Shown one piece after another: positions 24,632-39,747 of a stretch of 64,000 nucleotides of DNA. Position 1 is the first letter of the stretch; every line of letters begins with the position of its first letter. The DNA is taken from IMG/VR virus record IMGVR_UViG_3300036770_007539, positions 237,008-301,007 of that record; one strand, written 5' to 3'. The position numbers were made by a program, and so were the translations under genes. The notes under the pieces are model-generated. The model was given only the letters and a program-made list of their open reading frames with translations. It was not told the DNA's origin and made no database searches.

Positions 24632-25561
24632 TTATTCAGTTATATCGCTGGGCGTTACTGAATATTTTTTCCAAGTTAACGGGGAAGTAGATGAGCAAAC
24701 ATAAATACCACTATCAGCGTAAACTGTTTGTCCTACAACTGCATCTCCTGGTAAGTCTGCAAATCCGCTGGCATTTGGAAAAGCTGAAGTGGGTGGTGTG
24801 AAATTGCTGGTGTAACGTGCTAAGCCTTTGGTGATCCTAAATTCATCGAGATAGCCATTCAAGAAGCCAGTGGGAGAATTCCAGCTTTCAGAACCGATTG
24901 ACCAATAGGATGCTCCGTTTGTGACCGAAGCTGCCGTGGCGCTGTCTCCAGCCTGTGTTCCATTCCAAAAAATCATTACGTTGCTACCACTTTTTACAAC
25001 TGCAAAATGATACCAAGTATCGACAAGTATCGTAGGAACTGTTCGAACAATACCACCAGGAGTACTATTCAAACTAAGTATAAGAGATGTCGATGAATTA
25101 ATCCCAAATCCAATGTCAGCAATACTTCCTGCGTTGTATTTGTTGACAATTACTTGATAGGATACGGTGTTGAGCCTTACCCATCCTTCAATGGTTAAAT
25201 CTCCGCTTCCGAAATCTGTGTCAGAAGATGCAGGAAATGTTAGGTAATCTCCGCTTCCATCGAAGGCAGCTGAAGCTCCACCGAATTTGCTTTGTGCCGT
25301 GCTAATTTTAGCATTTCCATATGCTGTAATCGTTTTTGGTGAGTATGATTTATCTGTGAACGTCGTGCTGTTATTAGCTCCGTCCATATGAAGGAGGAGT
25401 GAAACAGTTGGGTCTCCTATAACTGCATAAGATGATCCTGCCGCATTTGATCCGGCAATGCCTGTTGCGCCTTGAGCCCCCTGAGGACCTTGAATGCTTT
25501 GACCTTGTGGACCTTGGGCTCCCTGAGCCCCTTGTGGTCCTGCTACGTTTAAATTTAACAT
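24632..25561 (-). CDS. LamG/ConA-like fibre tip protein with a very short collagen segment
   Basis: LLLHMDG, KFGGASAAFDG, DLTIEGW, WYHFAVV, GYLDEFRITKG.ARY. Confidence 0.8.
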   Translation of the reverse strand: MLNLNVAGPQGAQGAQGPQGQSIQGPQGAQGATGIAGSNAAGSSYAVIGDPTVSLLLHMDGANNSTTFTDKSYSPKTITAYGNAKISTAQSKFGGASAAFDGSGDYLTFPASSDTDFGSGDLTIEGWVRLNTVSYQVIVNKYNAGSIADIGFGINSSTSLILSLNSTPGGIVRTVPTILVDTWYHFAVVKSGSNVMIFWNGTQAGDSATAASVTNGASYWSIGSESWNSPTGFLNGYLDEFRITKGLARYTSNFTPPTSAFPNASGFADLPGDAVVGQTVYADSGIYVCSSTSPLTWKKYSVTPSDITE

Positions 25562-25694
25562 TAATATCTCCTGAGATTGTTAATTGTTTAATCTTAATAC
25601 TAAAAAATATCAAGGTAAAAAACTTACCTTGATATTTTTCTTTATATTAGTATATGATTTTATTGGTAATTTTAAAGCGCCTCATTAACTAAAA

Positions 25695-27785
25695 TCAAGT
25701 TGGAACTATTGCATACTTTTTCCAAGCAACAGGGGACTCACCAGAACAAATAAACACGCCTTGATTAGTGTGAACAATGTCACCAGCTTTTGGACTAACA
25801 GGCAATGAAGCTGTGCCATCTTCTGTTGCAAATGCTTCTGTTGGCGGTGTAAAATTGCTAGTATAGCGAGCTGTGTGGCTAATTCTAAACTCGTCCATGT
25901 AGCCATTAAGGAAAAGGTTAGGTCCGCTTATTCTATCACATCCAATAGTAATGTGAATGCCAGAATTTTTAGGATTAGATGCCGCAGCGCCCCCATATTG
26001 AGTTCCATTCCAATATATTCTTAATTCTCCGCTTGAATTTCTAACTACTGCAATATGATGCCATGTTTCAGCAGTTATTGAGGGAATTGTAACAGGATGA
26101 GTAAATGTGGTAAATCCTCCAGGATGCCAAGCCCAAGTAATTTGAGTTGCGCTATCTATGTAAAGACCATAATCATAAGTAATGTTATGATTATGCTTTC
26201 CTATAATACACATTTGCGTATTTGGAACTGATGGAAAATACAACCATGTCTCTATGGTAAATTCTTTGTTGCCAAGAGCGAATTCATCACTGGGGTTGTA
26301 ATATATAAAAGAATCAGTGCCATTAAAATAACCACTGGAGACTCCAAATTTTTTAATGGCTGTACTTAATTTGGCACCACCTGATACAGTTGGAGTGATT
26401 GGACTAGAAGAGCTGTCAAGAAATGTTGTACTATTATTGTCGCCATTCATATGCAATAAGAGCATGGTCGAAGAGCCCGACACTGGCGTCAATTCCATAT
26501 AAGTATTTGCACTGTTTCCAGCGACTCCTTGCACGCCTTGAGGTCCTTGCGATCCGCCATATTCTCCTTTAAAGCCTTGACTTCCTTGGACTCCTTGGGC
26601 TCCTTGAGTTCCTTGAAAACCTTGATTGCCCTGAGTGCCTTGAGGTCCTTGAACTGCTAAACCTTGAAATCCTTGATTTCCTTGAGATCCTTGATTTCCT
26701 TGGCTTCCTTGGTCCCCTTGTACGCCTTGGGTACCTTGAAGACCCTGCGACCCTTGATGACCTTGCGACCCTTGAAAACCAATAAATCCATCAAAGCCTT
26801 GATGACCTTGAAGTCCTCGGTTTCCTTGAAAGCCTTCATTGCCTTGAAAGCCTTGAGGACCTTGGGGTCCTTGGGGACCTTGAGAACCTATCGGTCCTTG
26901 TGGTCCGGGTATTCCTTGAAAACCTTGAGTGCCTTGATCTCCCGTATGTCCTGGATATCCTTGATATCCTCTGTGTGGTCCAGGATGACCTTGATGACCT
27001 ACAACCGATCCTTGAACGCCTCTGTCTCCGCCATAGTTAGAATAACCTTGAGGACCTTGAACTCCTTGTATCCCTTGAGGACCGCCTGGAATTCCTTGAA
27101 ATCCTTGATGTCCCTGTGAACCCTGCGGACCTTGTGGACCAGGACCACCTTGAGGTCCTTGAGCCCCAGAAGATCCAGAATGTCCCGCAGGACCATTTGA
27201 GCCTTGAGGACCTTGATGACCTAAATGCCCATCCGGTCCTTGAAATCCTTGGACTCCAACAATATCTCCTTGAACTCCACGATTTCCTTGAACGCCTTGA
27301 ATTCCTCGATTCCCATCTAATCCTTGATGCCCTTGAAATCCTTGAAATCCAGTCTCGCCTTTCACGCTTAAGAAAATTGAATATTCTTTGCCTGCAACTA
27401 AACTTCCATCAGAGCCAGAAATATTAGCCGAAACGATAACTGCATATCCGCTTCCGGTAGAATATACTGAAGAAACATCAGTAACTGTTCCTACTCGATA
27501 TTTGCTATCATCATCCAATTGAACCAAGGAAAGTTTTAAATCTTGTGTTTCTAGCAATGATTTAAAACCAGCTAACAATACAGTTACATCATTGGATTCA
27601 TTGTTAATGACGTTAATTGCTAACTGTAAAGAGCTGCCTTGTTGAAAATATTTGGCATATCCATCTAATGGATTAACATCTTCTGCATTGTTGGATGGCG
27701 CTACTTTCCATTTAGAAACGCCTTTTAAATTAGATCCGCTGTTTCCTTGAGAACCTTTTGGAGCTGTGATATTTAAATGAATCAT
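25695..27785 (-). CDS. Collagen-like fibre with LamG domain
   Basis: Long G-X-Q triplet run; C-terminal LamG motifs. Confidence 0.85.
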   Translation of the reverse strand: MIHLNITAPKGSQGNSGSNLKGVSKWKVAPSNNAEDVNPLDGYAKYFQQGSSLQLAINVINNESNDVTVLLAGFKSLLETQDLKLSLVQLDDDSKYRVGTVTDVSSVYSTGSGYAVIVSANISGSDGSLVAGKEYSIFLSVKGETGFQGFQGHQGLDGNRGIQGVQGNRGVQGDIVGVQGFQGPDGHLGHQGPQGSNGPAGHSGSSGAQGPQGGPGPQGPQGSQGHQGFQGIPGGPQGIQGVQGPQGYSNYGGDRGVQGSVVGHQGHPGPHRGYQGYPGHTGDQGTQGFQGIPGPQGPIGSQGPQGPQGPQGFQGNEGFQGNRGLQGHQGFDGFIGFQGSQGHQGSQGLQGTQGVQGDQGSQGNQGSQGNQGFQGLAVQGPQGTQGNQGFQGTQGAQGVQGSQGFKGEYGGSQGPQGVQGVAGNSANTYMELTPVSGSSTMLLLHMNGDNNSTTFLDSSSSPITPTVSGGAKLSTAIKKFGVSSGYFNGTDSFIYYNPSDEFALGNKEFTIETWLYFPSVPNTQMCIIGKHNHNITYDYGLYIDSATQITWAWHPGGFTTFTHPVTIPSITAETWHHIAVVRNSSGELRIYWNGTQYGGAAASNPKNSGIHITIGCDRISGPNLFLNGYMDEFRISHTARYTSNFTPPTEAFATEDGTASLPVSPKAGDIVHTNQGVFICSGESPVAWKKYAIVPT

Positions 27786-27800
27786 ATTTTCTCCAAATTA

Positions 27801-29921
27801 TCAAGGATAGATGGTTACAGGTGTAGATGAATATTTTTTCCAAGTTGCAGGAGATGTTGCTGAACATACATAAAATCCATCTCCAGAGTAAACAATTTGA
27901 CCCAACGTTGGATTAGCTGGCAAGTAAGAAGCAGCATCTGCATTTGCAAATGCACTCGTTGAGGGTGTAAAGTTTCCTGTGTATCTGGCAATTCCTTTAC
28001 TGATACGAATTTCATCAATATATCCATTTACATACCAGCGAGGGGAGTTAGGTCTATCTGCGCCAACTCCTAAAGTAGAAACTGAGTTTGTTGTGGCGGT
28101 CACAAATGAATCACCTGCTTGAGTTCCATTCCAATAAATAGCATATGTTCCAGAGTTTTTTACAACAGCAAAGTGATACCATGCCCCAGTTGTTATTGCT
28201 GGAATTTCTCTGTAATAGAAAGCTCCATTTGTATAAAAATGTACATAATTGGCTCTGTCAATAGAGAATAACCAGTCTGCAGCAATGCCGCTATTATGCT
28301 TAGTAACAACGGTCATTGTAGTAGCATCGGACCAGCCCGCCCCTCCAGCAGCTCCAACTGAACTAAGATTTACCCATCCTTCTATGGTAAAATCACCGCT
28401 GCTCAAATCAAAATCTGAAGAATAAGGTATGTTTAAGTATCCGGAACCATTAAAACTTCCGCTGGCGCTGCCAAATTTACTGGTTGCTGTGCTAATTTTG
28501 GCAGTTCCGTTAGCTGCGGGAATCTTGGTGGTATAAGAGTTATCTGTAAATGTAGTACTTTCATTTGCTCCATCCATATGCAAAAGCAATGAAACTGTTG
28601 AATCACCTAAATCGGTATAACTAGCGTTTACTCCATTTCCAGGTCCAGCTGCCCCTTGGACTCCTTGTGGTCCTTGTGGTCCGGTAGTATCGCCTTGTAC
28701 ACCTTGCGTTCCTTGCGTTCCTTGGAATCCTTGAACGCCTTGAGTTCCCTGTGTTCCTTGCGTTCCTTGAGCGCCTTGCACAGATGAGCCTTGAACGCCT
28801 TGTGCTCCTTGAGTACCTTGAAAGCCCTGCGCTCCTTGAACGCCTTGAGTTCCTTGAGTTCCTTGAAAGCCTTGGGTTCCTTGAACACCTTGCGTTCCTT
28901 GGGCTCCAACGAATCCTGGCTCGCCTTGGAATCCTTGGTTTCCTTGAACGCCTTGAGAGCCTTGAACGCCTTGAGGTCCTGGGTATCCTCTAACTCCAGT
29001 GCTGCCCGTTGGACCAGTAGCTCCTTGAGGTCCGCCATACATGCCTTGATGACCTTGTGGACCTTGTGCTCCTTGCACTCCTTGATAACCTTGAGGTCCA
29101 CCAGCAGCGCCTTGAACGCCTTGGGGTCCTTGAGGTCCTGCATAGCCTTGGGGTCCTTGTGGAGCTTGAGGTCCCATTGCTCCTACAGGACCAGGGAATC
29201 CTTGCGGTCCTTGGGGATTTCCTTGATGACCTTGGGGTCCTTGGACGCCTTGGAATCCTTGAGGACCGCCAAATAATCCTTGAGGACCTTGAGCACCCTG
29301 ACTTCCTTGAACGCCCTGTCCTCCGACTACTCCTTGATAACCTTGAGGACCTTGAGCGCCTTGTACACCTTGGACTCCTTGAGGACCACCGGAGGCGCCT
29401 TGATGACCTTGCAAACCTTGAGGTCCTTGATAACCATCAACTCCTTGTACTCCTTGGCTGCCTTGAACGCCTTGTGCTCCGGTATCACCACGGACATTGA
29501 TTAATATAGAATATTCTTTTCCTTCGGTAAATTCTCCAGAAGCATTCAAAATAAGGCTGGCAATAATGGCGGCATTTCCTGATCCCACAGGATAAGGATA
29601 CACACTGGAAATAGCACTAATTAATCCAGATTTATAAATGCTAGGGTCATCATTTTGAATAACGGTAACGATTAAACCTTCAGATTGTAATAAGGTTTTA
29701 GAGCTAGTTAAGAACTCTAATACGCTGCTAGAACTGCTGTTAATTTCGTTGATTGCAAATTGTAAAGAAGGACCATCTTGGAAAAATTTAAAATATCCAT
29801 CGACAGGATAAACATCTGAATTATTTATAGCGGCAGACATTCGCCATTTAGAGTTGCCCAGTAAATTAGAACCGCTAATTCCTTGAACTCCTTGAGGTCC
29901 GCTGATGTTTAATTGTATCAT
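27801..29921 (-). CDS. Collagen-like fibre with LamG domain
   Basis: Long G-X-Q triplet run; C-terminal LamG motifs. Confidence 0.85.
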   Translation of the reverse strand: MIQLNISGPQGVQGISGSNLLGNSKWRMSAAINNSDVYPVDGYFKFFQDGPSLQFAINEINSSSSSVLEFLTSSKTLLQSEGLIVTVIQNDDPSIYKSGLISAISSVYPYPVGSGNAAIIASLILNASGEFTEGKEYSILINVRGDTGAQGVQGSQGVQGVDGYQGPQGLQGHQGASGGPQGVQGVQGAQGPQGYQGVVGGQGVQGSQGAQGPQGLFGGPQGFQGVQGPQGHQGNPQGPQGFPGPVGAMGPQAPQGPQGYAGPQGPQGVQGAAGGPQGYQGVQGAQGPQGHQGMYGGPQGATGPTGSTGVRGYPGPQGVQGSQGVQGNQGFQGEPGFVGAQGTQGVQGTQGFQGTQGTQGVQGAQGFQGTQGAQGVQGSSVQGAQGTQGTQGTQGVQGFQGTQGTQGVQGDTTGPQGPQGVQGAAGPGNGVNASYTDLGDSTVSLLLHMDGANESTTFTDNSYTTKIPAANGTAKISTATSKFGSASGSFNGSGYLNIPYSSDFDLSSGDFTIEGWVNLSSVGAAGGAGWSDATTMTVVTKHNSGIAADWLFSIDRANYVHFYTNGAFYYREIPAITTGAWYHFAVVKNSGTYAIYWNGTQAGDSFVTATTNSVSTLGVGADRPNSPRWYVNGYIDEIRISKGIARYTGNFTPSTSAFANADAASYLPANPTLGQIVYSGDGFYVCSATSPATWKKYSSTPVTIYP

Positions 29922-30007
29922 CTAATTCTCCAAAACAAGTTAAATAAATAAACTTACAAGTTTATCTTCATCTGCCCATCTTTATTTATATCTGTTTATT
30001 GAATAAT

Positions 30008-30475
30008 TTAATAACTTAACTCCACTTCCAATACCCCCACCGCCCTCAACCTCTCCATAACTAAATTGTCCATCTTGTAACAATGCAACCTCTCCCTGTC
30101 ACTATAATATACCTCCCCACGCCTCATATACAACATCATGTCATCGTAATCTAAATAATAATACTCATCATCCACCACCCTCTTCTCTACCTCTATCCCC
30201 AAATCCCCCAACTTGTTCACCCACTCCAATGCCACATCCCATAACAACATCTCCACCCTCCCCACCATACTTATATCTTTAACCCTCCAAATCTTTCCCA
30301 CTCCCATATCCTCCGACTCCATCAATAAATATCCAATCTCCTTGGTCTTTCCCCGTACACATATCCTCACCTCTCCATCTCTAGAAAAAAGTTTAACCTT
30401 ATACCCGTTGGGCAACTTCACCAAACGGTCTTTGAGCCCGTCTAAGTTGCGTATAAAAGTCATACCTATATGCAA
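30008..30475 (-). CDS. Hypothetical protein (possibly acetyltransferase-like)
   Basis: 155 aa; composition distorted by skew. Confidence 0.45.
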   Translation of the reverse strand: MHIGMTFIRNLDGLKDRLVKLPNGYKVKLFSRDGEVRICVRGKTKEIGYLLMESEDMGVGKIWRVKDISMVGRVEMLLWDVALEWVNKLGDLGIEVEKRVVDDEYYYLDYDDMMLYMRRGEVYYSDRERLHCYKMDNLVMERLRAVGVLEVELSY

Positions 30476-30628
30476 TTTTAATCGTAAATTTTCCCAAACT
30501 TAAATAATTAATTTAATCTTTTTCTCGTCGCCCTAAAAATTAAAATCTTCCGAGTAAACCTTGCCACCCAATATAAATCGATCCAAAATCGGAGTGCTAT
30601 CTTTCCGCTAAATTTAATATCATTTTTT

Positions 30629-31243
30629 TCAATAAATAAATTTTCTAATTTTATTTAATCCAATTCCCATTACCTTGGATAATACCTCCACCTCCGCTAA
30701 ACATTCTCGCTCTTGACCACCCACCAAATCCGCCCCAGACCAATCCTTTAATACATCCTTTAAATCAGGAATGAAAAATCCATAACCCTCCAAATCTTCC
30801 ACCAATAATTCATCCACCCCAATCAATTCCACATCCCCTTCCCCTAAATCCCGAATGTCCCGAATCTCATTATCAATCATATACCCAGCAATCTTTTCCA
30901 CATCCTCCGATGAAAAACAAGGATGATCCATTATCTCTCGGAAAAATCCATACCCCTTATCAAAAAACTCCGCCCGAGATATAAATTCCTCATATAACTC
31001 CTCATCATAATTCATCTTCTCTAAATAATATCTTCTTAAATCTTCCTCCGAACTCATTCCCAGTTCAGGTCCGTTCCATAATACCAAAATCCGAGAATAT
31101 CCAACAGCTACCCCCAATAACTCCCCAATGTCAAATCCAATAAATCCCTCATACTCAGGTTGAACATCCACAATAATTAATTTCCCTCCCCCAACCACCT
31201 GAGCAAACTTATCTACCAACTTCCTTATTTCCTTAACATCCAT
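30629..31243 (-). CDS. Hypothetical protein, cysteine hydrolase/isochorismatase-like N-terminus
   Basis: LIIVDVQPEY; GG..ECL.EV. Confidence 0.5.
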   Translation of the reverse strand: MDVKEIRKLVDKFAQVVGGGKLIIVDVQPEYEGFIGFDIGELLGVAVGYSRILVLWNGPELGMSSEEDLRRYYLEKMNYDEELYEEFISRAEFFDKGYGFFREIMDHPCFSSEDVEKIAGYMIDNEIRDIRDLGEGDVELIGVDELLVEDLEGYGFFIPDLKDVLKDWSGADLVGGQERECLAEVEVLSKVMGIGLNKIRKFIY

Positions 31244-31283
31244 ACCTCAATATCCTACCATTACCATATTTTCATATATTACC

Positions 31284-31667
31284 ATGATCCCCCTCAATTA
31301 TCAACTCCAAGCCCTAGGCGCCATTAATCAAGTCTTCCTCAAAATCCTCCCCCACTCTCCCCATGACCCCACCCCAGCCTGGATCTACCTCACCCTCCAT
31401 CCCAATAACTCCTGGATCCTCACCGCCTCCTCCTCCAATCTCCCTCTCCTAACCCAACTCTTCGAAATTGCCCTGGAACTTCCCTCCACCATCAATTCCA
31501 ACGGTATCTCGCCCTCCAATTTCATCCCTCCTTGGGAAATCCCCCTATGGGAATCCCTCCAAGAAAGATCCGATCTCTCCCATCACCCCTTCAAAAAAGA
31601 TTCAACCCACTTATTCCAAGATTTAAAAAATAATGACCGAATCTGCCTTAAAGATTATCACTTCTGA
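31284..31667 (+). CDS. Hypothetical protein
   Basis: 127 aa, fills the gap between minus-strand genes; Pro/Leu/Ser-rich because of skew. Confidence 0.4.
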   Translation: MIPLNYQLQALGAINQVFLKILPHSPHDPTPAWIYLTLHPNNSWILTASSSNLPLLTQLFEIALELPSTINSNGISPSNFIPPWEIPLWESLQERSDLSHHPFKKDSTHLFQDLKNNDRICLKDYHF

Positions 31668-31682
31668 ATCCTCATCCCAACC

Positions 31683-32306
31683 TCATCCCAACCTCTTCTT
31701 CAATCCACCAATCAATCCCCCCAAGGTCCGATCCACCCATACCGTCGTCCCACAATACGTATCCTCAAAATGTATCTCCTCGTAATTCCCAGGTACCTCC
31801 ACTACCTCATACCCATATGTCCCCCTCTTCACCCTCCTACCATCCCTCGTACTGTCATGCCCCACAATTACCCCAGCCCGACCCATTACCAGATTCACAA
31901 TATCTCCCCGATTGCAAATCCCCGGATCCACAAAAATTAAATCCCACCCACCCCCTACCCCATCCACGATCTCCCGTAACTCACCCATATGCCCCCGCTC
32001 CTCAATCGGATATCCCCCAACCCTCGCCTCCTCATGCGCCCGACGTATCCCCTCCCCAGCTTCCACATAAACACCCCTCCAGTTCCTACCAACATACCTC
32101 TCCCTGCTCCTCTCATACCACCCCCTATTAAATTCCCCCAAGGAAATCTCCACAGACATTACCTCCCCACTATGATCCAATAAATACTCCGTCCCATCCC
32201 CTATCCCAAATTCCAATAACCGTCCCACCTTATATTCCCTAAACACTATCTCCAGATAATGATGCCAGTCCTGCGCTACCCCAAATCCATAATCCCTCTT
32301 TTTCAT
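31683..32306 (-). CDS. Class I SAM methyltransferase-like protein
   Basis: LLEFGIG, VMSVE, WDLIFVD, VIVGHD. Confidence 0.65.
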   Translation of the reverse strand: MKKRDYGFGVAQDWHHYLEIVFREYKVGRLLEFGIGDGTEYLLDHSGEVMSVEISLGEFNRGWYERSRERYVGRNWRGVYVEAGEGIRRAHEEARVGGYPIEERGHMGELREIVDGVGGGWDLIFVDPGICNRGDIVNLVMGRAGVIVGHDSTRDGRRVKRGTYGYEVVEVPGNYEEIHFEDTYCGTTVWVDRTLGGLIGGLKKRLG

Positions 32307-32823
32307 TCATTTCTCCTAAAAGTTATTTTCTATCTCTTATATCTCTTAATTACTATGTTTCTAAAATGACCATATGTGACCATATAATAATTTGTTCCAA
32401 GAAATTTTTATCAAAAAGTCCTGAATTAAAGGATCCACTTTTTACCACTTAAAACCACTTTTTACCATTTTTAACTAATTAAAATCAACCCCAAAGAAAT
32501 TATCTTATAAATAAAAGATAACACAAGGAAATGTAATGGTGGGAAGTAGTGGGAAAAGAAAAAGATGTCAAAAATAGAAAATGAAAAGACTGACGGATAG
32601 AAAAGACATAGAGAGAAGTGGGATAGATGGGATAGAAGCGGGAACAGAGAGAAGAGGAATTGGATAGAAAGGGAAACAAAGAAGATAGAAGATGGATAGG
32701 AAATGGATAGAAGTGGGAACAGGTGGGTGATAGAATACGGATAGAAGGTGAATAGAATACAGATAGAAGAGGGAACAGGCGGGGTAGAAAGGGGATGGAA
32801 GGGGAGAGGATATGGATAGAAAG

Positions 32824-32987
32824 GGATAGAATACGGATGGAATATGGATGGAATATGGGTAGAATATGGGTAGAATACGGATAGAATACGGATAGGAGTG
32901 GGATAGAATACGGATAGGAGTGGGATAGAAGTGGGATGGAATACGGATAGAAAGGAATGGAAGTGGGATAGGAGTGGGATAGAAAGA
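32824..32987 (+). repeat. About 15 tandem copies of an 11-bp unit GGATAGAATAC/GGATAGGAGTG
   Basis: Units read directly; degenerate GGATAG copies extend left to about 32590. Confidence 0.9.
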
Positions 32988-33116
32988 GGAGAGGATTGGT
33001 GGGAGTTGGTGCCAGAAGTAAATAAGAGCCATAAGTACGTTTACCCTGCTCGGGCGTCCGCTTCGACACGCCTGTCATCCCCCTCCATCGCTACCTGCCC
33101 CCTTTTGCCCCATTTC

Positions 33117-33258
33117 TTGACAATCTCTGGTTTGTTGCTATATATATGGTGTGACGACGAGACGAGACGAAACGAAACGCATCGCGAAACGATGCGAAAC
33201 GGAACGAATCGGCTCACGAACGACGCACGCTTGACAAGTGCCGGATCGGCGCTAGGAT
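33117..33258 (+). promoter_or_regulatory. Tandem sigma70-like promoters, unit 1
   Basis: TTGACA 33117-N16-TATATA; TTGACA 33231-N16-TAGGAT. Confidence 0.75.
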
Positions 33259-33340
33259 AGTGGTGTGGCGGATCGTCACGCCGTTGCCGGACGGATTCCG
33301 GTATCTCCCATGGGGGCAACGCCCCCGGAAAGGATCTCCC

Positions 33341-33634
33341 GTGTCAAAGGGAGCGATCCGTAGGAGAGCCCGTCGCTACAGGGAGCACGGGCTCTCCTTC
33401 ATCGTGCGCGTTCGGCTGGCGAAAGCCGCCGAACGCGCGATGAGCGACGAGGGCGGTCTCCGCGCCCTCGGCGCGGAGATGATCACGCATCGCACGTACA
33501 CAATGTGTACGTGCGATGCGTGCGACGAGTGGATCGCCGAGTGGAAGCTCGGCGATTTCACCATCAAAACCGACAGCGGATACATCGTATCCGCTGTCAA
33601 AAACCAACCCGTGCTCCCCTCTTCGGAGGGTTGA
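33341..33634 (+). CDS. Hypothetical protein
   Basis: AAAGGA RBS and GTG start; stop lies inside a repeat hairpin. Confidence 0.55.
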   Translation: MSKGAIRRRARRYREHGLSFIVRVRLAKAAERAMSDEGGLRALGAEMITHRTYTMCTCDACDEWIAEWKLGDFTIKTDSGYIVSAVKNQPVLPSSEG

Positions 33635-33642
33635 GCGCGGGT

Positions 33643-33701
33643 TGCGTCGCCAAGGTCCGCTTTCGAGCGGAGGGGGTTCGATTCCCCCGCGACGCACTAC
33701 C
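33643..33701 (+). ncRNA. Anticodon-less tRNA-like element 1
   Basis: TGCGTCGC/GCGACGCA stem; T-arm GGGGG-TTCGATT-CCCCC. Confidence 0.7.
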
Positions 33702-33761
33702 GCGCCAGACGGATTCTGGTGTTTCTCGAATGGGGGACATATGTCCCCGGAGGATAAGAGC

Positions 33762-34496
33762 ATGATGAAAAAGTACAATATTGCCGCGAAGTCCGCTCCC
33801 GCTCCCGCCCCCGCCGCCGCCCCCGTCGCCGCCGCCGTCCTCGCCGCCCCGGAGAACCCGGGCGTGTGGTTCGACCTCCACATCACGCGATTCAAAGAGG
33901 TGGGTTGCTCGGCTCGGGGCAACTTCGCGATGGTGCCGTCGGGCACCGTCGCGATCCTAGGGGCGAGCGACTACGAAGTCGGAGACGCCCTTTTGTCATA
34001 CGACTTCGATCGGGAGGGGCACACGCCCCTCAGCACCGCCCTCTCGCTCCGCATCTGGGCGGACCACACGTGGTGGGGAAAGGAATACCTCAAAGGCTGG
34101 GGCGCCGCCGCCCGCCGAAAGGCGGAGCGGATCTTGAACGACCTCGCGACGCCCGGTGGTAGCGACGAGGAGGACTACCCGGCATGGGTAGCTGCTGCAA
34201 AGCAGTATACTCTCTACTGCTTCCCCCCGTTCGACTTGTATCAGCGTATTCTTGTTGTGGAGTCTGACAGGTGCGGGTTCATAACCGCCCGCGTCGACGA
34301 GCAGCATCCGGATGAGAGCAAGCCCATGCACGGGGGCTGGCTGGTGCTTGCCCTTGCTCGAACGCAAGACCTGCCATCCAAGACCCGCCAAGCATGGGAG
34401 ATGTGCTCCCCGCTGTGGAGGGCGAGAGCCCTCGAATACATCCGTATGGTTGGATTTAAGGTTACGCCAGGAAGTTTCCTGGCTGATCTGGTCTGA
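33762..34496 (+). CDS. Hypothetical protein with an Ala/Pro-rich N-terminal linker
   Basis: RBS and ATG after a structured leader; 244 aa. Confidence 0.65.
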   Translation: MMKKYNIAAKSAPAPAPAAAPVAAAVLAAPENPGVWFDLHITRFKEVGCSARGNFAMVPSGTVAILGASDYEVGDALLSYDFDREGHTPLSTALSLRIWADHTWWGKEYLKGWGAAARRKAERILNDLATPGGSDEEDYPAWVAAAKQYTLYCFPPFDLYQRILVVESDRCGFITARVDEQHPDESKPMHGGWLVLALARTQDLPSKTRQAWEMCSPLWRARALEYIRMVGFKVTPGSFLADLV

Positions 34497-34538
34497 CCTG
34501 TCTCCCCCGCGCTCCCCTTCGGGGTCGAGCGCGGGGGC

Positions 34539-34611
34539 GTGCATCGCTTTGGAGTCTCGTTCCCCCGCAAGGGGGAACGAGGAGGGGGTTCGATTCCCTC
34601 ACGATGCACCA
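34539..34611 (+). ncRNA. Anticodon-less tRNA-like element 2
   Basis: GTGCATCG/CGATGCAC stem; TTCGATT T-loop; ends ACCA. Confidence 0.75.
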
Positions 34612-34898
34612 TGAGGAACATTCGTTCCTCCCGTTGTCGGACGGATTCCGGCTTCTCGTTGGGGCGCTCGCGCCGCCGAGCGGGAGGCGTTCCGCGCTTC
34701 CCTTCGCGGCGATGAGCGCCGTGAGGGGAATCGCGGTCGCCGCCTCGGCGACCGCGACGTCATCTGACCCATCTGCCCCTGGCTCCCCTCGCAAGAGGGT
34801 CGAGCCGGGGGCATCACCCCGAGGAACATTCGTTCCTCACCCTGACCGGAGGGTGTCCGGTGCTTCCAAGGGGATGAATGTCCCCGGAAAGGATTCTG

Positions 34899-35111
34899 AT
34901 GACCATCGGCGAGGCGGTCGACCGCCTCGTCTCGGAGGGGTACAACCCCGACCGAGACGACCTCCCCGCATGGGCAAAGGGGAAGGGGTTCCGACAGGAA
35001 CTCCGGACCCTCCCCTGCGGGGAGGAGTGCTGCGGGCAAGGGTACGCCCTTGTCCGCGGCAACGACGACGAGGAGGAGGAGCGGTTCATTCCGCTTCCTC
35101 CTCTCTTCTGA
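34899..35111 (+). CDS. Hypothetical protein with CGEECCG motif (paralog of 40796..41086)
   Basis: AAAGGA RBS; shared motif. Confidence 0.6.
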   Translation: MTIGEAVDRLVSEGYNPDRDDLPAWAKGKGFRQELRTLPCGEECCGQGYALVRGNDDEEEERFIPLPPLF

Positions 35112-35163
35112 GACTCGCCCCTGGCTCCCCTCGCAAGAGGGTCGAGCCGGGGGCATTTTTTCT

Positions 35164-35408
35164 GCGCTACATTGGCTATTTGGAGATCTAGTGTATTCGA
35201 AGCCGTACTATAAGAAATATTCTTCTTTCAATGACTTCTTTTTCTTTTCTCTTTTCCAAGAAAGAGGGGGGAGGGGGAGTCAATGAAAAAAAATCTTCTT
35301 TACAAGAGGCTTTACCTTTCTTTTTAGAGATCATGTTTCTTCGAAGCCAGTGCAGGTCTGACATTTCTAATCAATCGTTCGTTTTATTACTCTCTTGATA
35401 GCTAGGGC
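35164..35408. repeat. AT-rich spacer element 1
   Basis: GCGCTACATTGGCT ... AGCCAGTGCAG ... GCTAGGGC. Confidence 0.75.
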
Positions 35409-35433
35409 ATATTGTCGTGTTTGCGTGCGTAAC

Positions 35434-35535
35434 TTGACAAGTGATGGATCGTTGCTAGTATGTAGGGTGTGAGATGAACGCAAACGAGACAACGCAAGCG
35501 CGCTTGATTGACAAGCGGTGCAGCGGTGCTAGTAT
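35434..35535 (+). promoter_or_regulatory. Tandem sigma70-like promoters, unit 2
   Basis: TTGACA 35434-N16-TAGTAT; TTGACA 35508-N16-TAGTAT. Confidence 0.8.
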
Positions 35536-35819
35536 GCGGTCATCGAAGATTCGACGCAGCATAGGGGCGTCGAGACGAGCCGCCGTTAGCGGTGCTCTAA
35601 CAGAGCAGTCACGGGCTAGCCCGTGAATCGAGCCGGGCGATTCCCGGTGGTGAGCAAGGGATCTTGCGGCTTTGCCGGTTGAAGCCGCAAGATCCCTTGC
35701 CCTTGATAATCTGTGGAAGCTGTGCATAATGGTGTGCATGGCTTTGGGGGTCAATCCCCGCTTTGCCGGAGAGTGTCCGGTAACGTCCAAGGGGACGCAT
35801 GTCCCCGGAAAGGACTTTC

Positions 35820-36185
35820 TTGAACCTCCAAAAGAGGATCGAGGAAGTGGACCAGGCGCTCGCGCGTCTGGTCCAGAGCGAGATCGTCGTCGCGCAGGTA
35901 GTGCTCGACGATCTGATCTACCTCCACCGCCCCGCCAGCCGTCAGCACGTCTTGCGACAGCGGGCGGATCGCCTACTCCAGGATCGGGACTGGCGAGTCC
36001 AGCCGATCCTGGAGCGGCGCGAGCGACTGGAGCGCCTTCGCGGGCTGCTCGTCGCTCGCGCCGCACGCGCCGCAGGTCGCGACACCTGCGGCTACTGTGG
36101 GTGGGACAACGGTCCCATCGACCCCGCCACAGGTCGCGGTCTCAGCCGTCAAGGCTGGGATTGCGGCTATTGCGGGGGGAACTAA
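35820..36185 (+). CDS. Coiled-coil protein with a C-terminal Zn finger
   Basis: CGYCGWD..CGYC; TTG start after AAAGGA. Confidence 0.6.
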   Translation: MNLQKRIEEVDQALARLVQSEIVVAQVVLDDLIYLHRPASRQHVLRQRADRLLQDRDWRVQPILERRERLERLRGLLVARAARAAGRDTCGYCGWDNGPIDPATGRGLSRQGWDCGYCGGN

Positions 36186-36243
36186 CCCTTCTCTCCGCAT
36201 CGTTTCCTCCGCGCTCCCCTTCGGGGTCGAGCGCGGGGGAGGC

Positions 36244-36312
36244 TGCATCTTCTCGCTTGGAGGCGAGCGCCCCTTGCGGGGCGGACGGGTTCGATTCCCG
36301 TAGGATGTACCA
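36244..36312 (+). ncRNA. Anticodon-less tRNA-like element 3 (four-arm)
   Basis: TGCATCTT/AGGATGTA; GG-containing D-like loop; 4-nt-loop middle arm; ACGGG-TTCGATT-CCCGT; ends ACCA. Confidence 0.75.
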
Positions 36313-36380
36313 TGAGAGCTTGTCTCTCCCGCGTCGGACGGATTCCGATTGTCTGCGATCGAGAAAGGAGGACTGTCCAC

Positions 36381-36722
36381 ATGGCACAGTACCTCGGAAA
36401 CGCCTTCTCGCTCGGTATGCTCGATTGTCTCACGGCGGAAACGCCTGTGAGCGTCGAGTGTGCCGCCTTCACGCTCGACGAGGCACGCGCCTACGTCGAG
36501 CACAACCGCCCGACCTCGACGGTCGGGCACCTCGACACGGCGGAACTCTTCTCCGCCATGTTGGGGTCTTCCGTGGAGATGCGCCGCGTCTCCACGTCTC
36601 TGATCGGCGGGGATGAGATCCTCGTCGGTCAATACAACGGTCCGCGTCTTCCGGAGGGGGCGAAGAGCCTCCCCGAGGGCGCCAAGGTCCGCTGGATTCT
36701 GGCGCGCATCGTCGCGCGCTGA
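36381..36722 (+). CDS. acrIII-1: DUF1874 / AcrIII-1-like viral ring nuclease (anti-CRISPR type III)
   Basis: YLGNAFS, TLDEAR, STVGHLDTAELFSAMLG, EMRR, GDEIL, RLPEG match the STIV B116 / SIRV1 gp29 / YddF pattern. Confidence 0.8.
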   Translation: MAQYLGNAFSLGMLDCLTAETPVSVECAAFTLDEARAYVEHNRPTSTVGHLDTAELFSAMLGSSVEMRRVSTSLIGGDEILVGQYNGPRLPEGAKSLPEGAKVRWILARIVAR

Positions 36723-36881
36723 GGGTCCACACTCGCCCCTGGTTCCCCGCAAGGGTTGAGCCGGGGGCGTCCCTTCGGGGGAATATCTTTGGAAACTGCC
36801 TGCAAGTTCTGGCTTGTGGGCAGCTTCGAGGGATTGTCCCTTGACCGTAGCTAGGCGGACACCTAGCATCAGGAGGGTCAC

Positions 36882-37106
36882 ATGACTCTTCAAGAAGCAA
36901 TCCGAGAGGTCCGAGACCTTTCGGGAATCCCGGAGGAGCAGCTGCTCCGGGATTGGAACGAGAAGAAGTGCCAGTCTATGGACTGGCACTTCGACACCGA
37001 GACGGTCGAAGACCGTCTCGGAGAGTTGGTGACGTACTTCTACGTGGAAATCATCCCCGAAGGGGATGGTTTCCGCGTCAGGTCTCGAAAAGAGACCTGG
37101 CGATGA
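36882..37106 (+). CDS. Hypothetical protein
   Basis: AGGAGG RBS; 74 aa. Confidence 0.6.
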   Translation: MTLQEAIREVRDLSGIPEEQLLRDWNEKKCQSMDWHFDTETVEDRLGELVTYFYVEIIPEGDGFRVRSRKETWR

Positions 37107-37413
37107 GCCTCGCCCCCGCGTTCCCCTTCGGGGTCGAGCGCGGGGGCACTCGCGGGTTGAGCCGAAAGGTTCCCCGCTCTGACTTCAGGTGGCTCCGACG
37201 CTGATAACGGCGCGGGTTTGATACCCGCTGGAGGACACAGAACATCCTCCTAGCGAAAAGCCGCAGCGGGGAGTGCTTCCGATTCGGGTTACGGTGCAGG
37301 TTTGAGTCCTGCTCTCCCGCGTCACGGGGGTCGGTTGAGACGCCGCCGAACGGAAGCAACGCCTGATTGCAACAACAATAAAGGGGGCGCATATCCCCCG
37401 GAAAGGATATGGT

Positions 37414-38127
37414 TTGAGGACCATCTGCATCGGCGACATCCACGGATGTATCGCCGAGTTTCAAAAGCTCGTGGAGGTTCTCGCGCCCACGAGCGAGGAT
37501 CGGATCGTCCTGTTGGGCGATCTGATCGACAAGGGTCCAAAAAGCGCAGAAGTGGTTCGCTTCGCCCGCGAGATCGGAGCGACCACCATTCAGGGCAACC
37601 ACGAGGAGAAGGCTCTTCGATGGTTTGCCCACGAGAAGACTCGGATCGCCACGGGGAAGGCGAATCCGATGAGCCCTCCCGAGCACAAGGTTCGGGAGTG
37701 GAACACGATCCCCGCCGATGATCGGGAGTGGCTGGCAGCTGCTCCCGTTTACACGGATCTCGGCTCCGGGTTCCTCGCCGTTCACGGCGGGATGCTGCCC
37801 GGGGTCAAGCCACAAGATCACAAGAAGGGAATCCCCCTCCGCCTGAGGTTCGTCAACGACAAGGGCAAGTTTCTGCCCCTCGACGACGACCACGGCGATC
37901 CTGAGGGAGGTATCCCCTGGTACCAGGTCTACGATGGGGAGCACTCCCTGGTGGTGGGTCACACGGTTCACAGCCTGGAGTATCCCCGAATGGATCGTAT
38001 CGGGGATCGGGTGATCTGGCACCTGGACACGGGTTGCGTTCATGGTGGTCGCCTGACGGCGCTCATCCTGGAGACGCAAGAAGTCGTCCAGGTACAAGCG
38101 TCCCAAGTCTACAAGGCGCGGGACTGA
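37414..38127 (+). CDS. Calcineurin-like metallophosphoesterase (ApaH/PrpE/Pnkp-phosphatase-like)
   Basis: GDIHG, GDLIDKG, GNHE, HGG, GHT, LDTGCVHGGRLTA. Confidence 0.9.
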   Translation: MRTICIGDIHGCIAEFQKLVEVLAPTSEDRIVLLGDLIDKGPKSAEVVRFAREIGATTIQGNHEEKALRWFAHEKTRIATGKANPMSPPEHKVREWNTIPADDREWLAAAPVYTDLGSGFLAVHGGMLPGVKPQDHKKGIPLRLRFVNDKGKFLPLDDDHGDPEGGIPWYQVYDGEHSLVVGHTVHSLEYPRMDRIGDRVIWHLDTGCVHGGRLTALILETQEVVQVQASQVYKARD

Positions 38128-38447
38128 GGCGATTGGATTGTTCCTGCGTTCCCCGCAAGGGTTGAGCGCAGGAACAAGTTTCAAGAAGAAAGGAAGAGGA
38201 AGTGGAAATCTGTATGGTTTCGGGTTTTCCGACTCCTTGCGGGTGTTTTGCCTGCCAGGAGTCGGTGGAGCAGGCGCGCGGTGGCAACTGCCACTGCAGC
38301 GCCTGCTGCAAGGTTCGCTTCGGAAACGAAGCGAACGAAGCGAACGAAGGTTGCCGATGGGAGGCGGTTCGACCGCCTCGTCCTCGGCAGTAGGAATCGC
38401 CCCATCGCGTTCCCCCTTGCGGGGTCGAGCGCGATGGGGATTTTTCT

Positions 38448-38683
38448 GCGCTACATTGGCTATATCTGAGATCTTGACATATTCGTTGCTGATGCAGAAT
38501 CTTTTTTTCTTCAATGATTTTTCTTTTTTCTTTTCTACGGGAGGGAGAAACAAGAGAATCAATGAGCTAAGATATTCTTCAAAAGAAACGACTTGTCATT
38601 TATCTTTTACGAGATCAAACACATTCGGAGCCGATGCAGCTCTGATTCGTTTATCAAACGTTTGTTTAGTTCTCAGCTAGGGC
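38448..38683. repeat. AT-rich spacer element 2
   Basis: GCGCTACATTGGCT ... AGCCGATGCAGC ... GCTAGGGC. Confidence 0.75.
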
Positions 38684-38717
38684 TAGGGTGTTCGTTTCTG
38701 CGTGAATCTGTGCAGCC

Positions 38718-38873
38718 TTGACAACGGGCGGATCGATGCTAGATTGTATGGTGTGAGAGAGAGCAACGAATCGAAACAAGCGAGCGAATGAGCGAACGCA
38801 TAAGCCGCGACGGTAGCGGTTAGCGGGTAGCGGATAGCGCGTAGCTTGACACGGTTGGATTCGCTGCTAGGCT
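38718..38873 (+). promoter_or_regulatory. Tandem sigma70-like promoters, unit 3
   Basis: TTGACA 38718-N16-TAGATT; TTGACA 38846-N16-TAGGCT. Confidence 0.75.
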
Positions 38874-38894
38874 TTCTCATAGAAGGGAGGTTAC

Positions 38895-39200
38895 ATGCAA
38901 CAGATTTGTGGAAGATGCTCCGGAAGGGAGAGTCATTCCTGTTGCCCTGATTGCAGGGGAAAGGGCTGGCTTTCCCGCGCGGACGTTCGCGTTCTTCGCT
39001 TGAAGCAGGCGGCATTCTGTTTGCTTCACGAGAAGGCGCGCGAGCATTGGCTCACGCTGAGTGAGCCGCGTCCGCGCCAGGAGTCCTTCGTGCTGGACTA
39101 CGTGTTCAAGCACGAGCAATGGTACTTCGAGACGATCGTCTCGAAGTTTACCCCGGAGCAGAAGCGCACGCTTCTGCGTCGGTTCCCCTGCAATCCCTGA
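38895..39200 (+). CDS. Hypothetical protein with a DnaJ-type Zn motif
   Basis: CGRCSGR..CPDCRGKG. Confidence 0.6.
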   Translation: MQQICGRCSGRESHSCCPDCRGKGWLSRADVRVLRLKQAAFCLLHEKAREHWLTLSEPRPRQESFVLDYVFKHEQWYFETIVSKFTPEQKRTLLRRFPCNP

Positions 39201-39307
39201 ACCGGGTAGAGCGAGCCCTCGCAAGGGGGCTCGTTCCCTACAACCGGATCTGGATCGTGATTGATCTAGGTTCGATTATAGGGATTACCCCTATTGAAAG
39301 GAGGAGC

Positions 39308-39615: not shown

Positions 39616-39621
39616 ACGGCA

Positions 39622-39687: not shown

Positions 39688-39747
39688 CCGCGTCGGACGG
39701 ATTCCGATATCTCTTGAATGGGGGCAAAGCTCCCGGAAGGATTCTTC

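What the first reader, a model, noticed from the sequence alone, without database searches (positions are those of the whole stretch)
30000..33010. Extreme mirror-image C/G skew flipping at the point of transcriptional divergence
Seen: plus-strand 30181-30240 has 29 C and 2 G, while 32761-32820 has 29 G and 2 C. The flip lies at about 32.3-32.5 kb, where minus-strand genes give way to plus-strand genes. The skew also affects the plus-strand ORF 31284..31667, so it follows the strand and not the coding direction. It is confined to about 3 kb. Inference: persistent single-strandedness with C deamination on each side of a replication origin or genome-end junction.
Basis: partly seen in the sequence, partly recalled or inferred. 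Interest (0 to 1): 0.7.

Follow-up and report, generated by a model that had tools for sequence, protein, structure and literature searches.

The report
Mirror-image G/C strand bias in phage
A large phage and its relatives keep a 3-kb stretch in which, on each side of a divergence point, the strand reading away from it is rich in G and almost free of C whichever way the genes point; the cause is not proven, but this composition favours RNA:DNA hybrids (R-loops).

Summary
All 28 windows of 500 nt with |GC skew| above 0.45 lie at window 29.8-33.2 kb, and the sign flips at about 32,500. It is not an assembly chimera and not codon choice.

Three minus-strand genes (A, B, C) and one plus-strand gene (D) are conserved, and all carry the same plus-strand bias at every codon position. 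To the right lies a non-coding purine tract of about 500 nt.

Four related contigs with enough flank show the same layout: GC-rich RNA island, purine tract, AT-rich spacer, skewed genes. The tract's composition is conserved; its sequence is not. Distant homologues of B and C elsewhere have ordinary composition.

Cytosine deamination does not fit. G is gained from A, T and C, T falls, and GC content rises.

Two consequences can be computed. The outward RNAs would form the most stable RNA:DNA hybrids in the record, and they offer Rho no loading windows.

Best reading, about 0.3: a selected, R-loop-prone divergent transcription zone, possibly a replication start. Localised strand-asymmetric mutation remains a serious rival. 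No promoter, transcript or DNA start has been mapped.

The parts
29922..30007 (.). Left border of the domain: an AT-rich gap between gene A and the unskewed collagen-repeat gene (27801-29921).
   Evidence: The gap has 5 G and 15 C. The collagen gene has GC3 skew -0.44, ordinary for this genome. No significant terminator fold was found.
30008..30475 (-). Gene A, 155 aa, function unknown. Its coding strand is G-rich and C-poor.
   Evidence: Homologues at 65-88% identity occur in L003, L005, L013 and L015. G3 is .49 and C3 is .09. No Pfam or PHROG match above threshold.
30629..31243 (-). Gene B, 204 aa, from a conserved phage family of unknown function.
   Evidence: 54 homologues were found. The model is confident (pLDDT 92.7) but has no PDB fold match. 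G3 is .34, against .10 in the unskewed homologue in L007.
31284..31667 (+). Gene D, 127 aa, on the opposite strand. Its coding strand is C-rich and G-poor, which shows that the bias follows the DNA strand.
   Evidence: D is intact in L003, L013 and L014 at about 89-90% amino-acid identity. Differences by codon position are 11/7/28, 11/6/25 and 8/6/34. There is one in-frame codon indel. All antisense frames carry 5-11 stops.
31683..32306 (-). Gene C, 207 aa, with a class I SAM-dependent methyltransferase fold. It is the most G-rich gene (G .44, C .075 on its coding strand).
   Evidence: Foldseek matches COMT, TrmR and MnmM-type methyltransferases (probability 1.0, TM .5-.58). Homologues at 62-86% identity are also skewed wherever their DNA was examined; homologues at 42-43% (L016, L017) are not.
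32307..32499 (.). AT-rich spacer (24-26% GC) at the point of divergence. It holds the blocks ATGACCATATGTGACCATATAATAA (32366-32390) and GTTCCAAGAAATTTTTATCAAAAAGTCCTGA (32394-32424), and CCACTTTTTA x4 (32435-32473).
   Evidence: Both blocks are shared with L003 and L012. One leftward sigma-70-like site scores 9 of 12 (32414-32387); no rightward site was found. No DnaA boxes were found.
32500..33010 (+). Non-coding purine tract (A .42, G .37, T .17, C .04). It includes about 24 tandem 11-nt units of consensus GATAGAATAGG (32729-32984) and 20 copies of GATAG.
   Evidence: As RNA a 150-nt stretch folds with MFE 0. It is the most hybrid-favouring stretch of the record, at -0.278 kcal/mol per bp. 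An equivalent tract of 310-570 nt with 78-86% purine is present in L003, L012, L014 and L015.
33009..33048 (+). Conserved end of the purine tract: GTGCCAGAAGT..GCCATAAGT..TTTACCCTG. It marks the border with the GC-rich island.
   Evidence: It is the only well-aligned block common to all five sequences in alignment A3.
33117..33258 (+). First two sigma-70-like promoter copies of the GC-rich RNA island (TTGACA-N16-TATATA at 33117-33144; TTGACA-N16-TAGGAT at 33231-33258). They read rightward, away from the flip.
   Evidence: (family D8).

Best explanation
This is a composition-coded domain that has been conserved over a long time and is probably maintained by selection. Two stretches leave an AT-rich spacer of about 200 bp in opposite directions. 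One is a leftward group of small genes (C, antisense-D, B, A). The other is a rightward non-coding purine tract. In both, the strand reading away from the spacer is rich in G or purines and almost free of C.

Shown:
- The domain is real.
- It follows the DNA strand, not the coding direction.
- Its borders fall at gene borders.
- It recurs in relatives whose sequence has diverged, always where a GC-rich RNA island and a purine tract are also seen, wherever the flank is long enough to tell.

Computed from sequence:
- An RNA read outward would pair with its template more stably than the DNA duplex does. These are the two most extreme places in the 301-kb record.
- The purine tract would have no structure of its own as RNA.
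- Neither outward RNA has any C>G window for Rho to load on. Every inward (antisense) window is one.

Inferred:
- Outward transcription leaves persistent RNA:DNA hybrids (R-loops) on both sides of the spacer.
- These hold the DNA open.
- They most plausibly serve to start replication, as at other R-loop-primed origins, or to keep the neighbouring RNA-gene promoters underwound.

Outward transcription of the tract, the R-loops themselves and any origin activity are all untested.
For: 1. The domain is unique in the record, at about 6 sd from the mean.
2. The bias acts alike on both coding directions. In plus-strand letters, third positions of gene C shift by C +.40, T -.21, A -.12, G -.08. Those of gene D shift by C +.42, T -.22, A -.15, G -.06.
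3. G is actively gained, not only C lost. GGG rises from 8% to 54% of Gly codons, GTG from 8% to 52% of Val, and GAG from 21% to 76% of Glu.
4. Sites expected to be least constrained on the same strand differ threefold in G. Four-fold sites have 53-76% and intergenic spacers 19-21%. One mutational equilibrium does not predict that.
5. The purine tract keeps its composition in five relatives (78-86% purine, C 1.5-6.5%), although the tracts of the more distant relatives are not alignable.
6. Homologues of B and C in phages without this layout have ordinary skew of .09-.32. The state is therefore derived and tied to this locus.
7. Hybrid-minus-duplex energy is -0.278 kcal/mol per bp in the tract and -0.265 in gene C. 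The genome mean is +0.02 to +0.04 with sd .05-.06.
8. 14 of the 15 R-loop-forming sequences predicted in the record lie here, all oriented outward.
9. C>G windows make up 0% of outward sense windows and 100% of antisense windows. Ordinary sense strands have 22-35%. The Rho logic follows PMC6144790.
10. The tract as RNA has MFE 0.
11. G-rich RNA and skewed promoters are linked to R-loops in PMC3787257.
12. The spacer is AT-rich with short direct repeats and sits beside an array with 11-bp phasing, which is an origin-like layout.
Against: - No rightward promoter was found in the spacer, and the only leftward one is weak.
- No RNA data could be listed.
- No DnaA boxes were found in the spacer.
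- No Pol A, Pol B or RNase H family was found in the 71%-complete record.
- Cumulative skew gives only a local minimum here.
- In L003 the skew runs over more than 7 kb of coding genes. That is far more than a primer needs, and R-loops across genes should hinder their expression.
- G-run clustering beyond what codon usage gives is weak, z about 2 combined.
- The energy and R-loop scans restate G-richness, so they are not independent evidence.
- Selection has not been separated from mutation.
Confidence: 0.3

Rival explanations
1. A localised, strand-asymmetric mutation process drives the minus strand toward G on the left and the plus strand toward G on the right. Candidates are transcription-associated damage or repair on the exposed non-template strand, or a low-fidelity polymerase copying the first kilobases from a start site. 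The composition would then be a by-product, as in vertebrate mitochondrial DNA.
For: - The bias follows the strand regardless of coding direction. Gene D behaves like mitochondrial ND6 (my knowledge of mtDNA).
- It reaches third positions hardest. GC3 skew is .69-.86, against -.2 to -.44 in neighbouring genes.
- Against the unskewed homologue of B in L007, the largest class of change is A to G: 69 sites against 9 in the reverse direction.
- Plus-strand third positions of gene C (C .51, A .30, T .14, G .04) resemble a mitochondrial light strand.
- Counts between window and L003 are roughly symmetric (G>A 20, A>G 15), as expected at an equilibrium.
Against: - At Gly and Val four-fold sites the G gain comes mainly from T and C, not from A.
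- T does not rise.
- Four-fold sites and intergenic spacers on the same strand differ threefold in G.
- The right arm is A-rich.
- The borders are abrupt and lie at gene borders.
- The strength varies by gene without a distance gradient. In L003, G3 runs .52.31.20.48 (C3 of the oppositely coded D).43 with increasing distance.
- No known prokaryotic process gives |skew| of 0.7-0.9 over a few kilobases.
Confidence: 0.25
2. The selected property is immunity to Rho, with no role for R-loops or replication. The outward RNAs include untranslated stretches: the purine tract and the 440 nt antisense to gene D. They lack any site for Rho to load on, so the units are read to the end. Any inward or antisense RNA is an ideal Rho substrate and is cut short, which insulates the divergent units.
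For: - C>G windows of 78 nt make up 0% of outward sense windows and 100% of antisense windows.
- The antisense RNA is C-rich, G-poor and nearly unstructured, at -8.6 kcal/mol per 150 nt against -27 for the genome.
- Regions without C>G bubbles lack Rho-dependent signals, according to PMC6144790.
- Both low C and high G count against Rho loading in that model.
Against: - Translated genes do not normally need this protection.
- It does not explain why only this gene group is affected.
- The mRNA of gene D would itself be a perfect Rho target.
- Whether the unknown host has Rho at all is not known.
- No rightward promoter was found for the tract.
Confidence: 0.2
3. The right arm is a protein-binding array, either iterons of an origin or a partition (centromere-like) site. 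It is made of units phased at 11 bp around a GATAG core. The skew of the left genes would then be a separate matter.
For: - About 24 tandem 11-nt units and 20 GATAG copies lie in 510 nt, against 1.5 per kb in the genome.
- L014 has an 11-nt array with a different unit, GGGAACAGTAA.
- GATAG recurs 8 times in the L003 tract.
Against: - The unit sequence is not conserved between relatives.
- L003 and L012 have no regular array.
- What is conserved is the composition.
- No candidate binding protein was identified.
Confidence: 0.1
4. One reading: long-lived single-stranded DNA with cytosine deamination on each side of an origin or of a junction of genome ends.
For: - The polarity matches an origin.
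- The C-poor strands are those that would be displaced.
- There is a local minimum of cumulative skew at window 32524.
Against: - GC content is raised, T is not gained, and G is gained from all three other bases.
- The right arm is A+G-rich.
- Contigs from three samples run straight through the stretch, though this does not exclude a concatemer junction.
Confidence: 0.05

Closest known systems
GC-skewed, R-loop-forming regions downstream of CpG-island promoters in human genes (PMC3787257)
   Same: The G-rich non-template strand begins at the start of the transcription unit. G-rich RNA gives hybrids of superior stability.
   Different: The skew here is far stronger, as far as I recall the human values. 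The domain lies in a phage with a 33% GC genome and covers protein-coding genes at all codon positions. There is no link to methylation. R-loops have not been shown here.
Immunoglobulin class-switch regions (my knowledge)
   Same: They are kilobase-scale, G-rich and C-poor on the non-template strand, partly made of short tandem repeats, lie downstream of a promoter, and form R-loops.
   Different: Switch regions are non-coding and eukaryotic, and they serve recombination. Here most of the left arm codes for conserved proteins.
R-loop-primed replication origins: ColE1 ori, phage T4 oriF/oriG, mitochondrial CSB/OH (my knowledge)
   Same: A promoter reads into a stretch where G-rich RNA stays paired to a C-rich template beside AT-rich DNA. 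The polarity equals that of the nascent leading strands.
   Different: Those elements are tens to hundreds of nucleotides long and one-sided. Here the stretches are 0.5 kb and 2.4 kb (more than 7 kb in L003) and two-sided. No origin activity, RNase H or primer processing is shown.
Heavy/light strand asymmetry of vertebrate mitochondrial DNA (my knowledge)
   Same: One strand is G-poor at every codon position. The single gene on the other strand (ND6 there, D here) has the mirrored codon usage. Third-position values are similar.
   Different: In mtDNA the bias is genome-wide, graded with time spent single-stranded, and enriches G+T. Here it is local, has sharp borders, and enriches purines at four-fold sites.
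Rho utilisation logic: C>G bubbles (PMC6144790)
   Same: The antisense strands are continuous C>G bubbles and are unstructured. The sense strands have none.
   Different: Rho logic is known for short sites of about 80 nt, not for whole operons shaped to avoid them. The host and its Rho are unknown.
Szybalski's transcription-direction rule and purine loading of RNA-like strands (my knowledge)
   Same: The RNA-like strand is purine-rich and the template carries pyrimidine clusters.
   Different: The usual effect is a few percent and follows each gene's direction. Here it is extreme and overrides the direction of gene D.

Membership tests
R-loop-forming, GC-skewed promoter-proximal region | Strong positive G-over-C skew on the non-template strand downstream of a start site | tested here: met
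   Skew is +0.68 over 2.3 kb reading leftward and +0.81 over 0.5 kb reading rightward. The strands count as non-template only if transcription runs outward.
R-loop-forming, GC-skewed promoter-proximal region | G clusters (initiation zone) followed by an elongation zone with at least 40% G | tested here: met
   14 of the 15 sequences in the whole record that meet these rules lie here. The rules were recalled from memory and implemented in simplified form.
R-loop-forming, GC-skewed promoter-proximal region | An active promoter reading into the skewed stretch | tested here: inconclusive
   One leftward sigma-70-like site scores 9 of 12. No rightward site was found. No RNA runs were listed.
R-loop-forming, GC-skewed promoter-proximal region | RNA:DNA hybrids detected in vivo | not testable with these tools
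   This needs DRIP or bisulfite footprinting in infected cells.
Replication origin (iteron or R-loop type) | Nascent DNA starts, or a copy-number peak, at the site | not testable with these tools
   Only assembled contigs with flat depth were available.
Replication origin (iteron or R-loop type) | AT-rich unwinding element next to repeated binding sites | tested here: met
   The spacer has 24-26% GC and carries CCACTTTTTA x4. An array with 11-nt phasing lies beside it.
Replication origin (iteron or R-loop type) | DnaA boxes or an adjacent initiator gene | tested here: not met
   No TTWTNCACA match with at least 7 of 8 positions lies in 32250-32560. Genes A-D have no initiator-like match.
Replication origin (iteron or R-loop type) | Global minimum of cumulative GC skew | tested here: inconclusive
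   Only a local minimum lies at window 32524. The curve follows gene orientation, and the record is 71% complete.
Deamination-driven strand asymmetry (mtDNA type) | The exposed strand gains T (from C) and G (from A), with A the base most depleted | tested here: not met
   T3 falls from .42 to .25-.37. At Gly and Val four-fold sites A goes from .36 to .31, T from .40 to .16 and C from .16 to 0.
Deamination-driven strand asymmetry (mtDNA type) | The bias is independent of coding direction | tested here: met
   Gene D mirrors genes A-C.
Deamination-driven strand asymmetry (mtDNA type) | A gradient with distance or exposure time | tested here: not met
   The borders are sharp. In L003, G3 runs .52.31.20.48.43 along 7 kb.
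Rho-proof transcript / Rho-prone antisense | No C>G windows of 78 nt on the sense RNA, and continuous ones on the antisense RNA | tested here: met
   0% against 100%.
Rho-proof transcript / Rho-prone antisense | The host has Rho and the transcripts respond to it | not testable with these tools
   The host is unknown. The source is a subsurface metagenome.
Restriction-site avoidance | Depletion of G/C-containing palindromes | tested here: not met
   There are 13 six-base palindromes against 10-16 in controls of similar length, and 34 four-base ones against 43-53.

The most novel reading that the evidence does not exclude
A lineage of very large phages uses composition rather than sequence as a cis element. 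A G-only (C-free) outward strand on both sides of an AT-rich spacer, extending over whole protein genes, locks outward transcripts into RNA:DNA hybrids that Rho cannot remove. This creates a two-sided R-loop replication start, or a permanently open zone, beside an expandable array of GC-rich structured RNA genes. The proteins of the flanking genes have been reshaped to fit this nucleic-acid constraint.
Probability: 0.2. Interest if true: 0.8.

Novelty: new variant of a known kind. Interest (0 to 1): 0.62.

Why it matters
If the bias is selected, a bulk property of DNA can be conserved as a functional element. That property is the near-absence of one base from one strand over kilobases. It would then be strong enough to reshape codon use and amino-acid content of four conserved genes, including one on the opposite strand.

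It would also give a sequence-only marker for R-loop-based replication starts or control zones in large phages, whose origins are mostly unmapped.

If the bias is mutational, it would be the strongest local strand-specific mutation bias I know of in a prokaryotic virus, and it would point to an unknown targeted process.

Either way the locus is linked to a 19-kb array of structured RNA genes that no Rfam family matched at its curated cut-off.

Tried and rejected
- Assembly chimera: rejected. Contigs from three samples bridge both borders.
- Codon choice alone: rejected. All codon positions, the intergenic DNA, a non-coding tract and both coding directions are affected.
- Foreign origin of the genes: rejected. 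Families B and C have ordinary-composition members in other phages.
- Restriction-site avoidance: rejected. Palindromes containing G/C are not depleted.
- Thermophile-style GC-rich RNA as the explanation for the island: not supported. The two tRNAs have 44-51% GC.
- DnaA boxes in the spacer: none.
- Intrinsic terminator at the left border: none significant.
- G-quadruplex density: modest. Six motifs against 1.7±2.1 expected.
- G-run clustering beyond codon usage: weak.
- Searches that found nothing: phage database by DNA; conserved spacer and promoter motifs in viral and metagenome contigs; RNA sequencing runs; Pol A, Pol B and RNase H families in the record.
- Function searches for proteins A, B and D by Pfam, PHROGs, PDB sequence search, Foldseek and the ESM Atlas gave no usable function. 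Rfam found no known family in the skewed stretch or the island at curated cut-offs.
- Literature searches found no description of such a domain in phages.
Full report
**Setting**

The window is the last 64 kb of a 301,007-bp linear IMG/VR virus record that CheckV rates 71% complete. Runs from a subsurface metagenome hold the sequence. Most of the record has about 33% GC. Genes to the left of the finding include two collagen-repeat proteins with laminin-G domains, which look like tail fibres, and a UvdE endonuclease. To the right lies a block of 52-64% GC at window 33-52 kb, followed by tRNA genes and a group I intron.

**1.

- Window 30000-32306 has C .368 and G .071, a skew of -0.68. Window 32500-33010 has G .372 and C .039, a skew of +0.81.
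- All 28 of the record's 500-nt windows with |skew| above 0.45 form one run here. The record's mean is 0.07 and its sd 0.13.
- The flip is sharp, at 32,500 ± 50. The left border is at about 29,920 and the right border at about 33,010.
- The stretch is not a mis-join. One contig of run X1, which may be the source sample, spans 28800-34536 without a difference. Contigs from two other samples bridge each border.

**2. What is there**

Left arm:
- Three minus-strand genes: A (30008-30475), B (30629-31243) and C (31683-32306).
- One plus-strand gene: D (31284-31667).
- B belongs to a family with 54 detected members.
- C has six close homologues and a class I SAM-methyltransferase fold.
- D is intact in three relatives. 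Changes concentrate at third codon positions (11/7/28, 11/6/25, 8/6/34), there is one in-frame codon indel, and every antisense frame is full of stops. The plus-strand ORF is therefore a real gene.

Centre:
- A spacer of 193 nt with 24-26% GC. It carries short direct repeats and two blocks shared with L003 and L012.

Right arm:
- A non-coding purine tract (A .42, G .37, T .17, C .04). About half of it is a tandem array of 11-nt units.
- The tract ends at a conserved motif, GTGCCA..GCCATAAGT..TTTACCCTG.

**3. Nature of the bias**

Ordinary genes of this genome have third positions of A .35, C .12, G .11, T .42.
- Genes A-C have G3 .34-.51 and C3 .03-.09.
- Gene D, coded on the other strand, has C3 .54 and G3 .05.
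- In plus-strand letters, gene C shifts by C +.40, T -.21, A -.12, G -.08. Gene D shifts by C +.42, T -.22, A -.15, G -.06. The pressure therefore belongs to the DNA strand and has equal strength in both coding directions.

The bias is an active gain of G, not only avoidance of C:
- GGG goes from 8% to 54% of Gly codons.
- GTG goes from 8% to 52% of Val codons.
- GAG goes from 21% to 76% of Glu codons.
- GGC and GTC are each used 0 times in 72 and 58 codons.

First and second positions and amino-acid content shift as well. Examples are K to R and fewer A, P, T, H and Q residues.

At Gly and Val four-fold sites G rises from .08 to .53, mainly at the cost of T (.40 to .16) and C (.16 to 0). Intergenic pieces are G-poor on the plus strand but not C-rich.

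**4. Relatives**

- The contigs encoding close homologues that were fetched (L003, L005/L006, L012-L015; C at 74-86% identity) carry the same skew.5-.77 on the coding strand.
- Where the flank is long enough (L003, L012, L014, L015) the same four-part layout recurs. It consists of a GC-rich block, a purine tract (310-570 nt, 78-86% purine, C 1.5-6.5%), an AT-rich spacer and the skewed genes.
- The tracts of the more distant relatives cannot be aligned apart from the end motif. L014 has an 11-nt array with a different unit.
- L004, a more distant relative (B 64%), also has a GC-rich block next to skewed genes.
- Homologues of B at 24-61% identity and of C at 42-43% identity lie in ordinary phage contexts with skew .09-.32. 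The state is therefore derived and belongs to this locus.
- The strength differs from gene to gene and does not fall off with distance. In L003, G3 is .44, .52, .31, .20, .48 (C3 of D) and .43 along 7 kb.
- The collagen gene next door is unskewed in the window and L005, and the skew drops where it begins in L013.
- Gene order within the block is shuffled between relatives.

**5.

Cytosine deamination predicts lower GC, a gain of T and, on the right arm, G+T-richness. None of these is seen. Adding adenine deamination, as in mitochondrial DNA, fits some third-position values and the behaviour of gene D. It does not fit the four-fold sites, the sharp borders, the gene-specific strengths or the A-rich right arm.

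The origin or genome-end part is open:
- The polarity is origin-like.
- Cumulative G-C has only a local minimum at 32524.
- No DnaA boxes were found.
- No read-level data were available.

**6. Consequences that can be computed**

- The two most hybrid-favouring 300-nt windows of the record are the purine tract read rightward (-0.278 kcal/mol per bp) and gene C read leftward (-0.265). The mean is +0.02 to +0.04 with sd .05-.06.
- 14 of the 15 sequences that meet simplified R-loop-forming rules lie here, all oriented outward.
- The tract as RNA has no structure, with MFE 0.
- The outward RNAs have no 78-nt window with C above G. Their antisense has nothing else, and it is nearly unstructured.
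- Single-stranded C-rich, G-poor RNA is what Rho binds (PMC6144790). G-rich RNA gives the hybrid stability that underlies R-loops at skewed promoters (PMC3787257).
- These measures restate the composition. They show what the composition would do, not that it does it.

**7. Interpretation**

I commit, at about 0.3, to a selected composition domain that makes outward transcription from the spacer R-loop-prone and Rho-proof on both sides. It would hold the DNA open beside the RNA island, most plausibly to start replication.

Points in favour of selection:
- Composition is conserved without sequence conservation.
- G content differs threefold between four-fold sites and spacers on the same strand.
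- The borders lie at gene borders.

Points against, or untested:
- No rightward promoter was found.
- The length of the domain in L003 is far beyond what a primer needs.
- Hybrids across genes would carry a cost.

Rivals:
- Localised strand-asymmetric mutation (0.25).
- Rho insulation alone (0.2).
- An iteron or partition array for the right arm only (0.1).

Restriction avoidance was tested and rejected.

**8. Novelty**

I found no description of such a domain in phages. It resembles known GC-skew and R-loop regions and mitochondrial strand asymmetry. It differs from them in scale, locality, sharp borders and coverage of coding genes. I therefore rate it a new variant of a known kind.

Noticed in passing
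window 33050-52000: A 19-kb block of 52-64% GC in a 33% GC phage genome, with few credible ORFs. It holds 8 rightward sigma-70-like promoter copies, five of them identical over TTGACA-N17-TAGTAT-GTAGGGTGTGAGA. Its RNA folds very stably, at -56.5 kcal/mol per 150 nt against -27 for the genome. It has many GNRA or UUCG hairpins. No Rfam family matched at its curated cut-off. It looks like an array of structured RNA genes.
   Followed up: partly
window 39198-39308, 41950-42060, 42521-42631, 44400-44520, 46475-46585, 46907-47017, 47263-47385, 49846-49960, 50659-50780: Nine copies of a module of about 110 nt with two hairpins. 7 of the 29 predicted pairs keep pairing through changes on both sides, which is evidence of a conserved RNA structure.
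   Followed up: partly
window 33643-33697, 34540-34609, 39622-39685, 48401-48459: tRNA-like minihelices. Each has an acceptor-like stem, one GC hairpin, and a T arm with loop UUCGAUU, followed by CACUA or CACCA. There is no D arm. Fold z-scores are -3.2 to -5.6. Weak Rfam matches to tRNA-Sec and mascRNA fall below threshold. They may be processing signals within the RNA island.
   Followed up: partly
L014 1-3350 and L015 1-3050, compared with window 33050-57170: In these relatives the GC-rich island is only about 2.3 kb. It is followed by the same tRNA-Lys and tRNA-Leu region that lies at 53-57 kb in the window. The island therefore expands and contracts between relatives.
   Followed up: partly
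window 33146-33230, 38325-38349, 45567-45605: The stretches just downstream of the island promoters are nearly free of T. They are made of ACGAA/ACGAG-type repeats, a second odd composition rule at this locus.
   Followed up: no
window 32435-32473; L003 about 1700-1740 (inverted); L004 about 1290-1310: The motif CCACTTTTTACC(AC) recurs next to the start of the skewed genes in three relatives, once in inverted orientation. It may be a regulatory or promoter element of the phage.
   Followed up: no
L015 about 3460-3600 (spacer): The spacer of this relative carries a run of (CCTAA)n on the G-poor strand. This is a simple repeat that obeys the same no-G rule.
   Followed up: no
window 59131-59336 and 59376: A group I intron (Rfam, 59.9 bits) is followed 40 nt later by a tRNA-like T arm and 3' end. 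This suggests an intron-split tRNA gene that ARAGORN did not call.
   Followed up: no
window 24632-29921: Three neighbouring minus-strand genes have laminin-G/concanavalin-like domains. Two of them (696 and 706 aa) have long collagen Gly-X-Y repeats and are probable tail fibres. Short contigs laid there at 90% likeness showed many skip and go-back joints.
   Followed up: no
window 1-64000: GC content steps through at least four levels: about 31% at 1-9 kb, 37% at 9-14 kb, 45-49% at 14-19 kb, and 52-64% at 33-52 kb. This points to strong mosaicism in this end of the genome.
   Followed up: no
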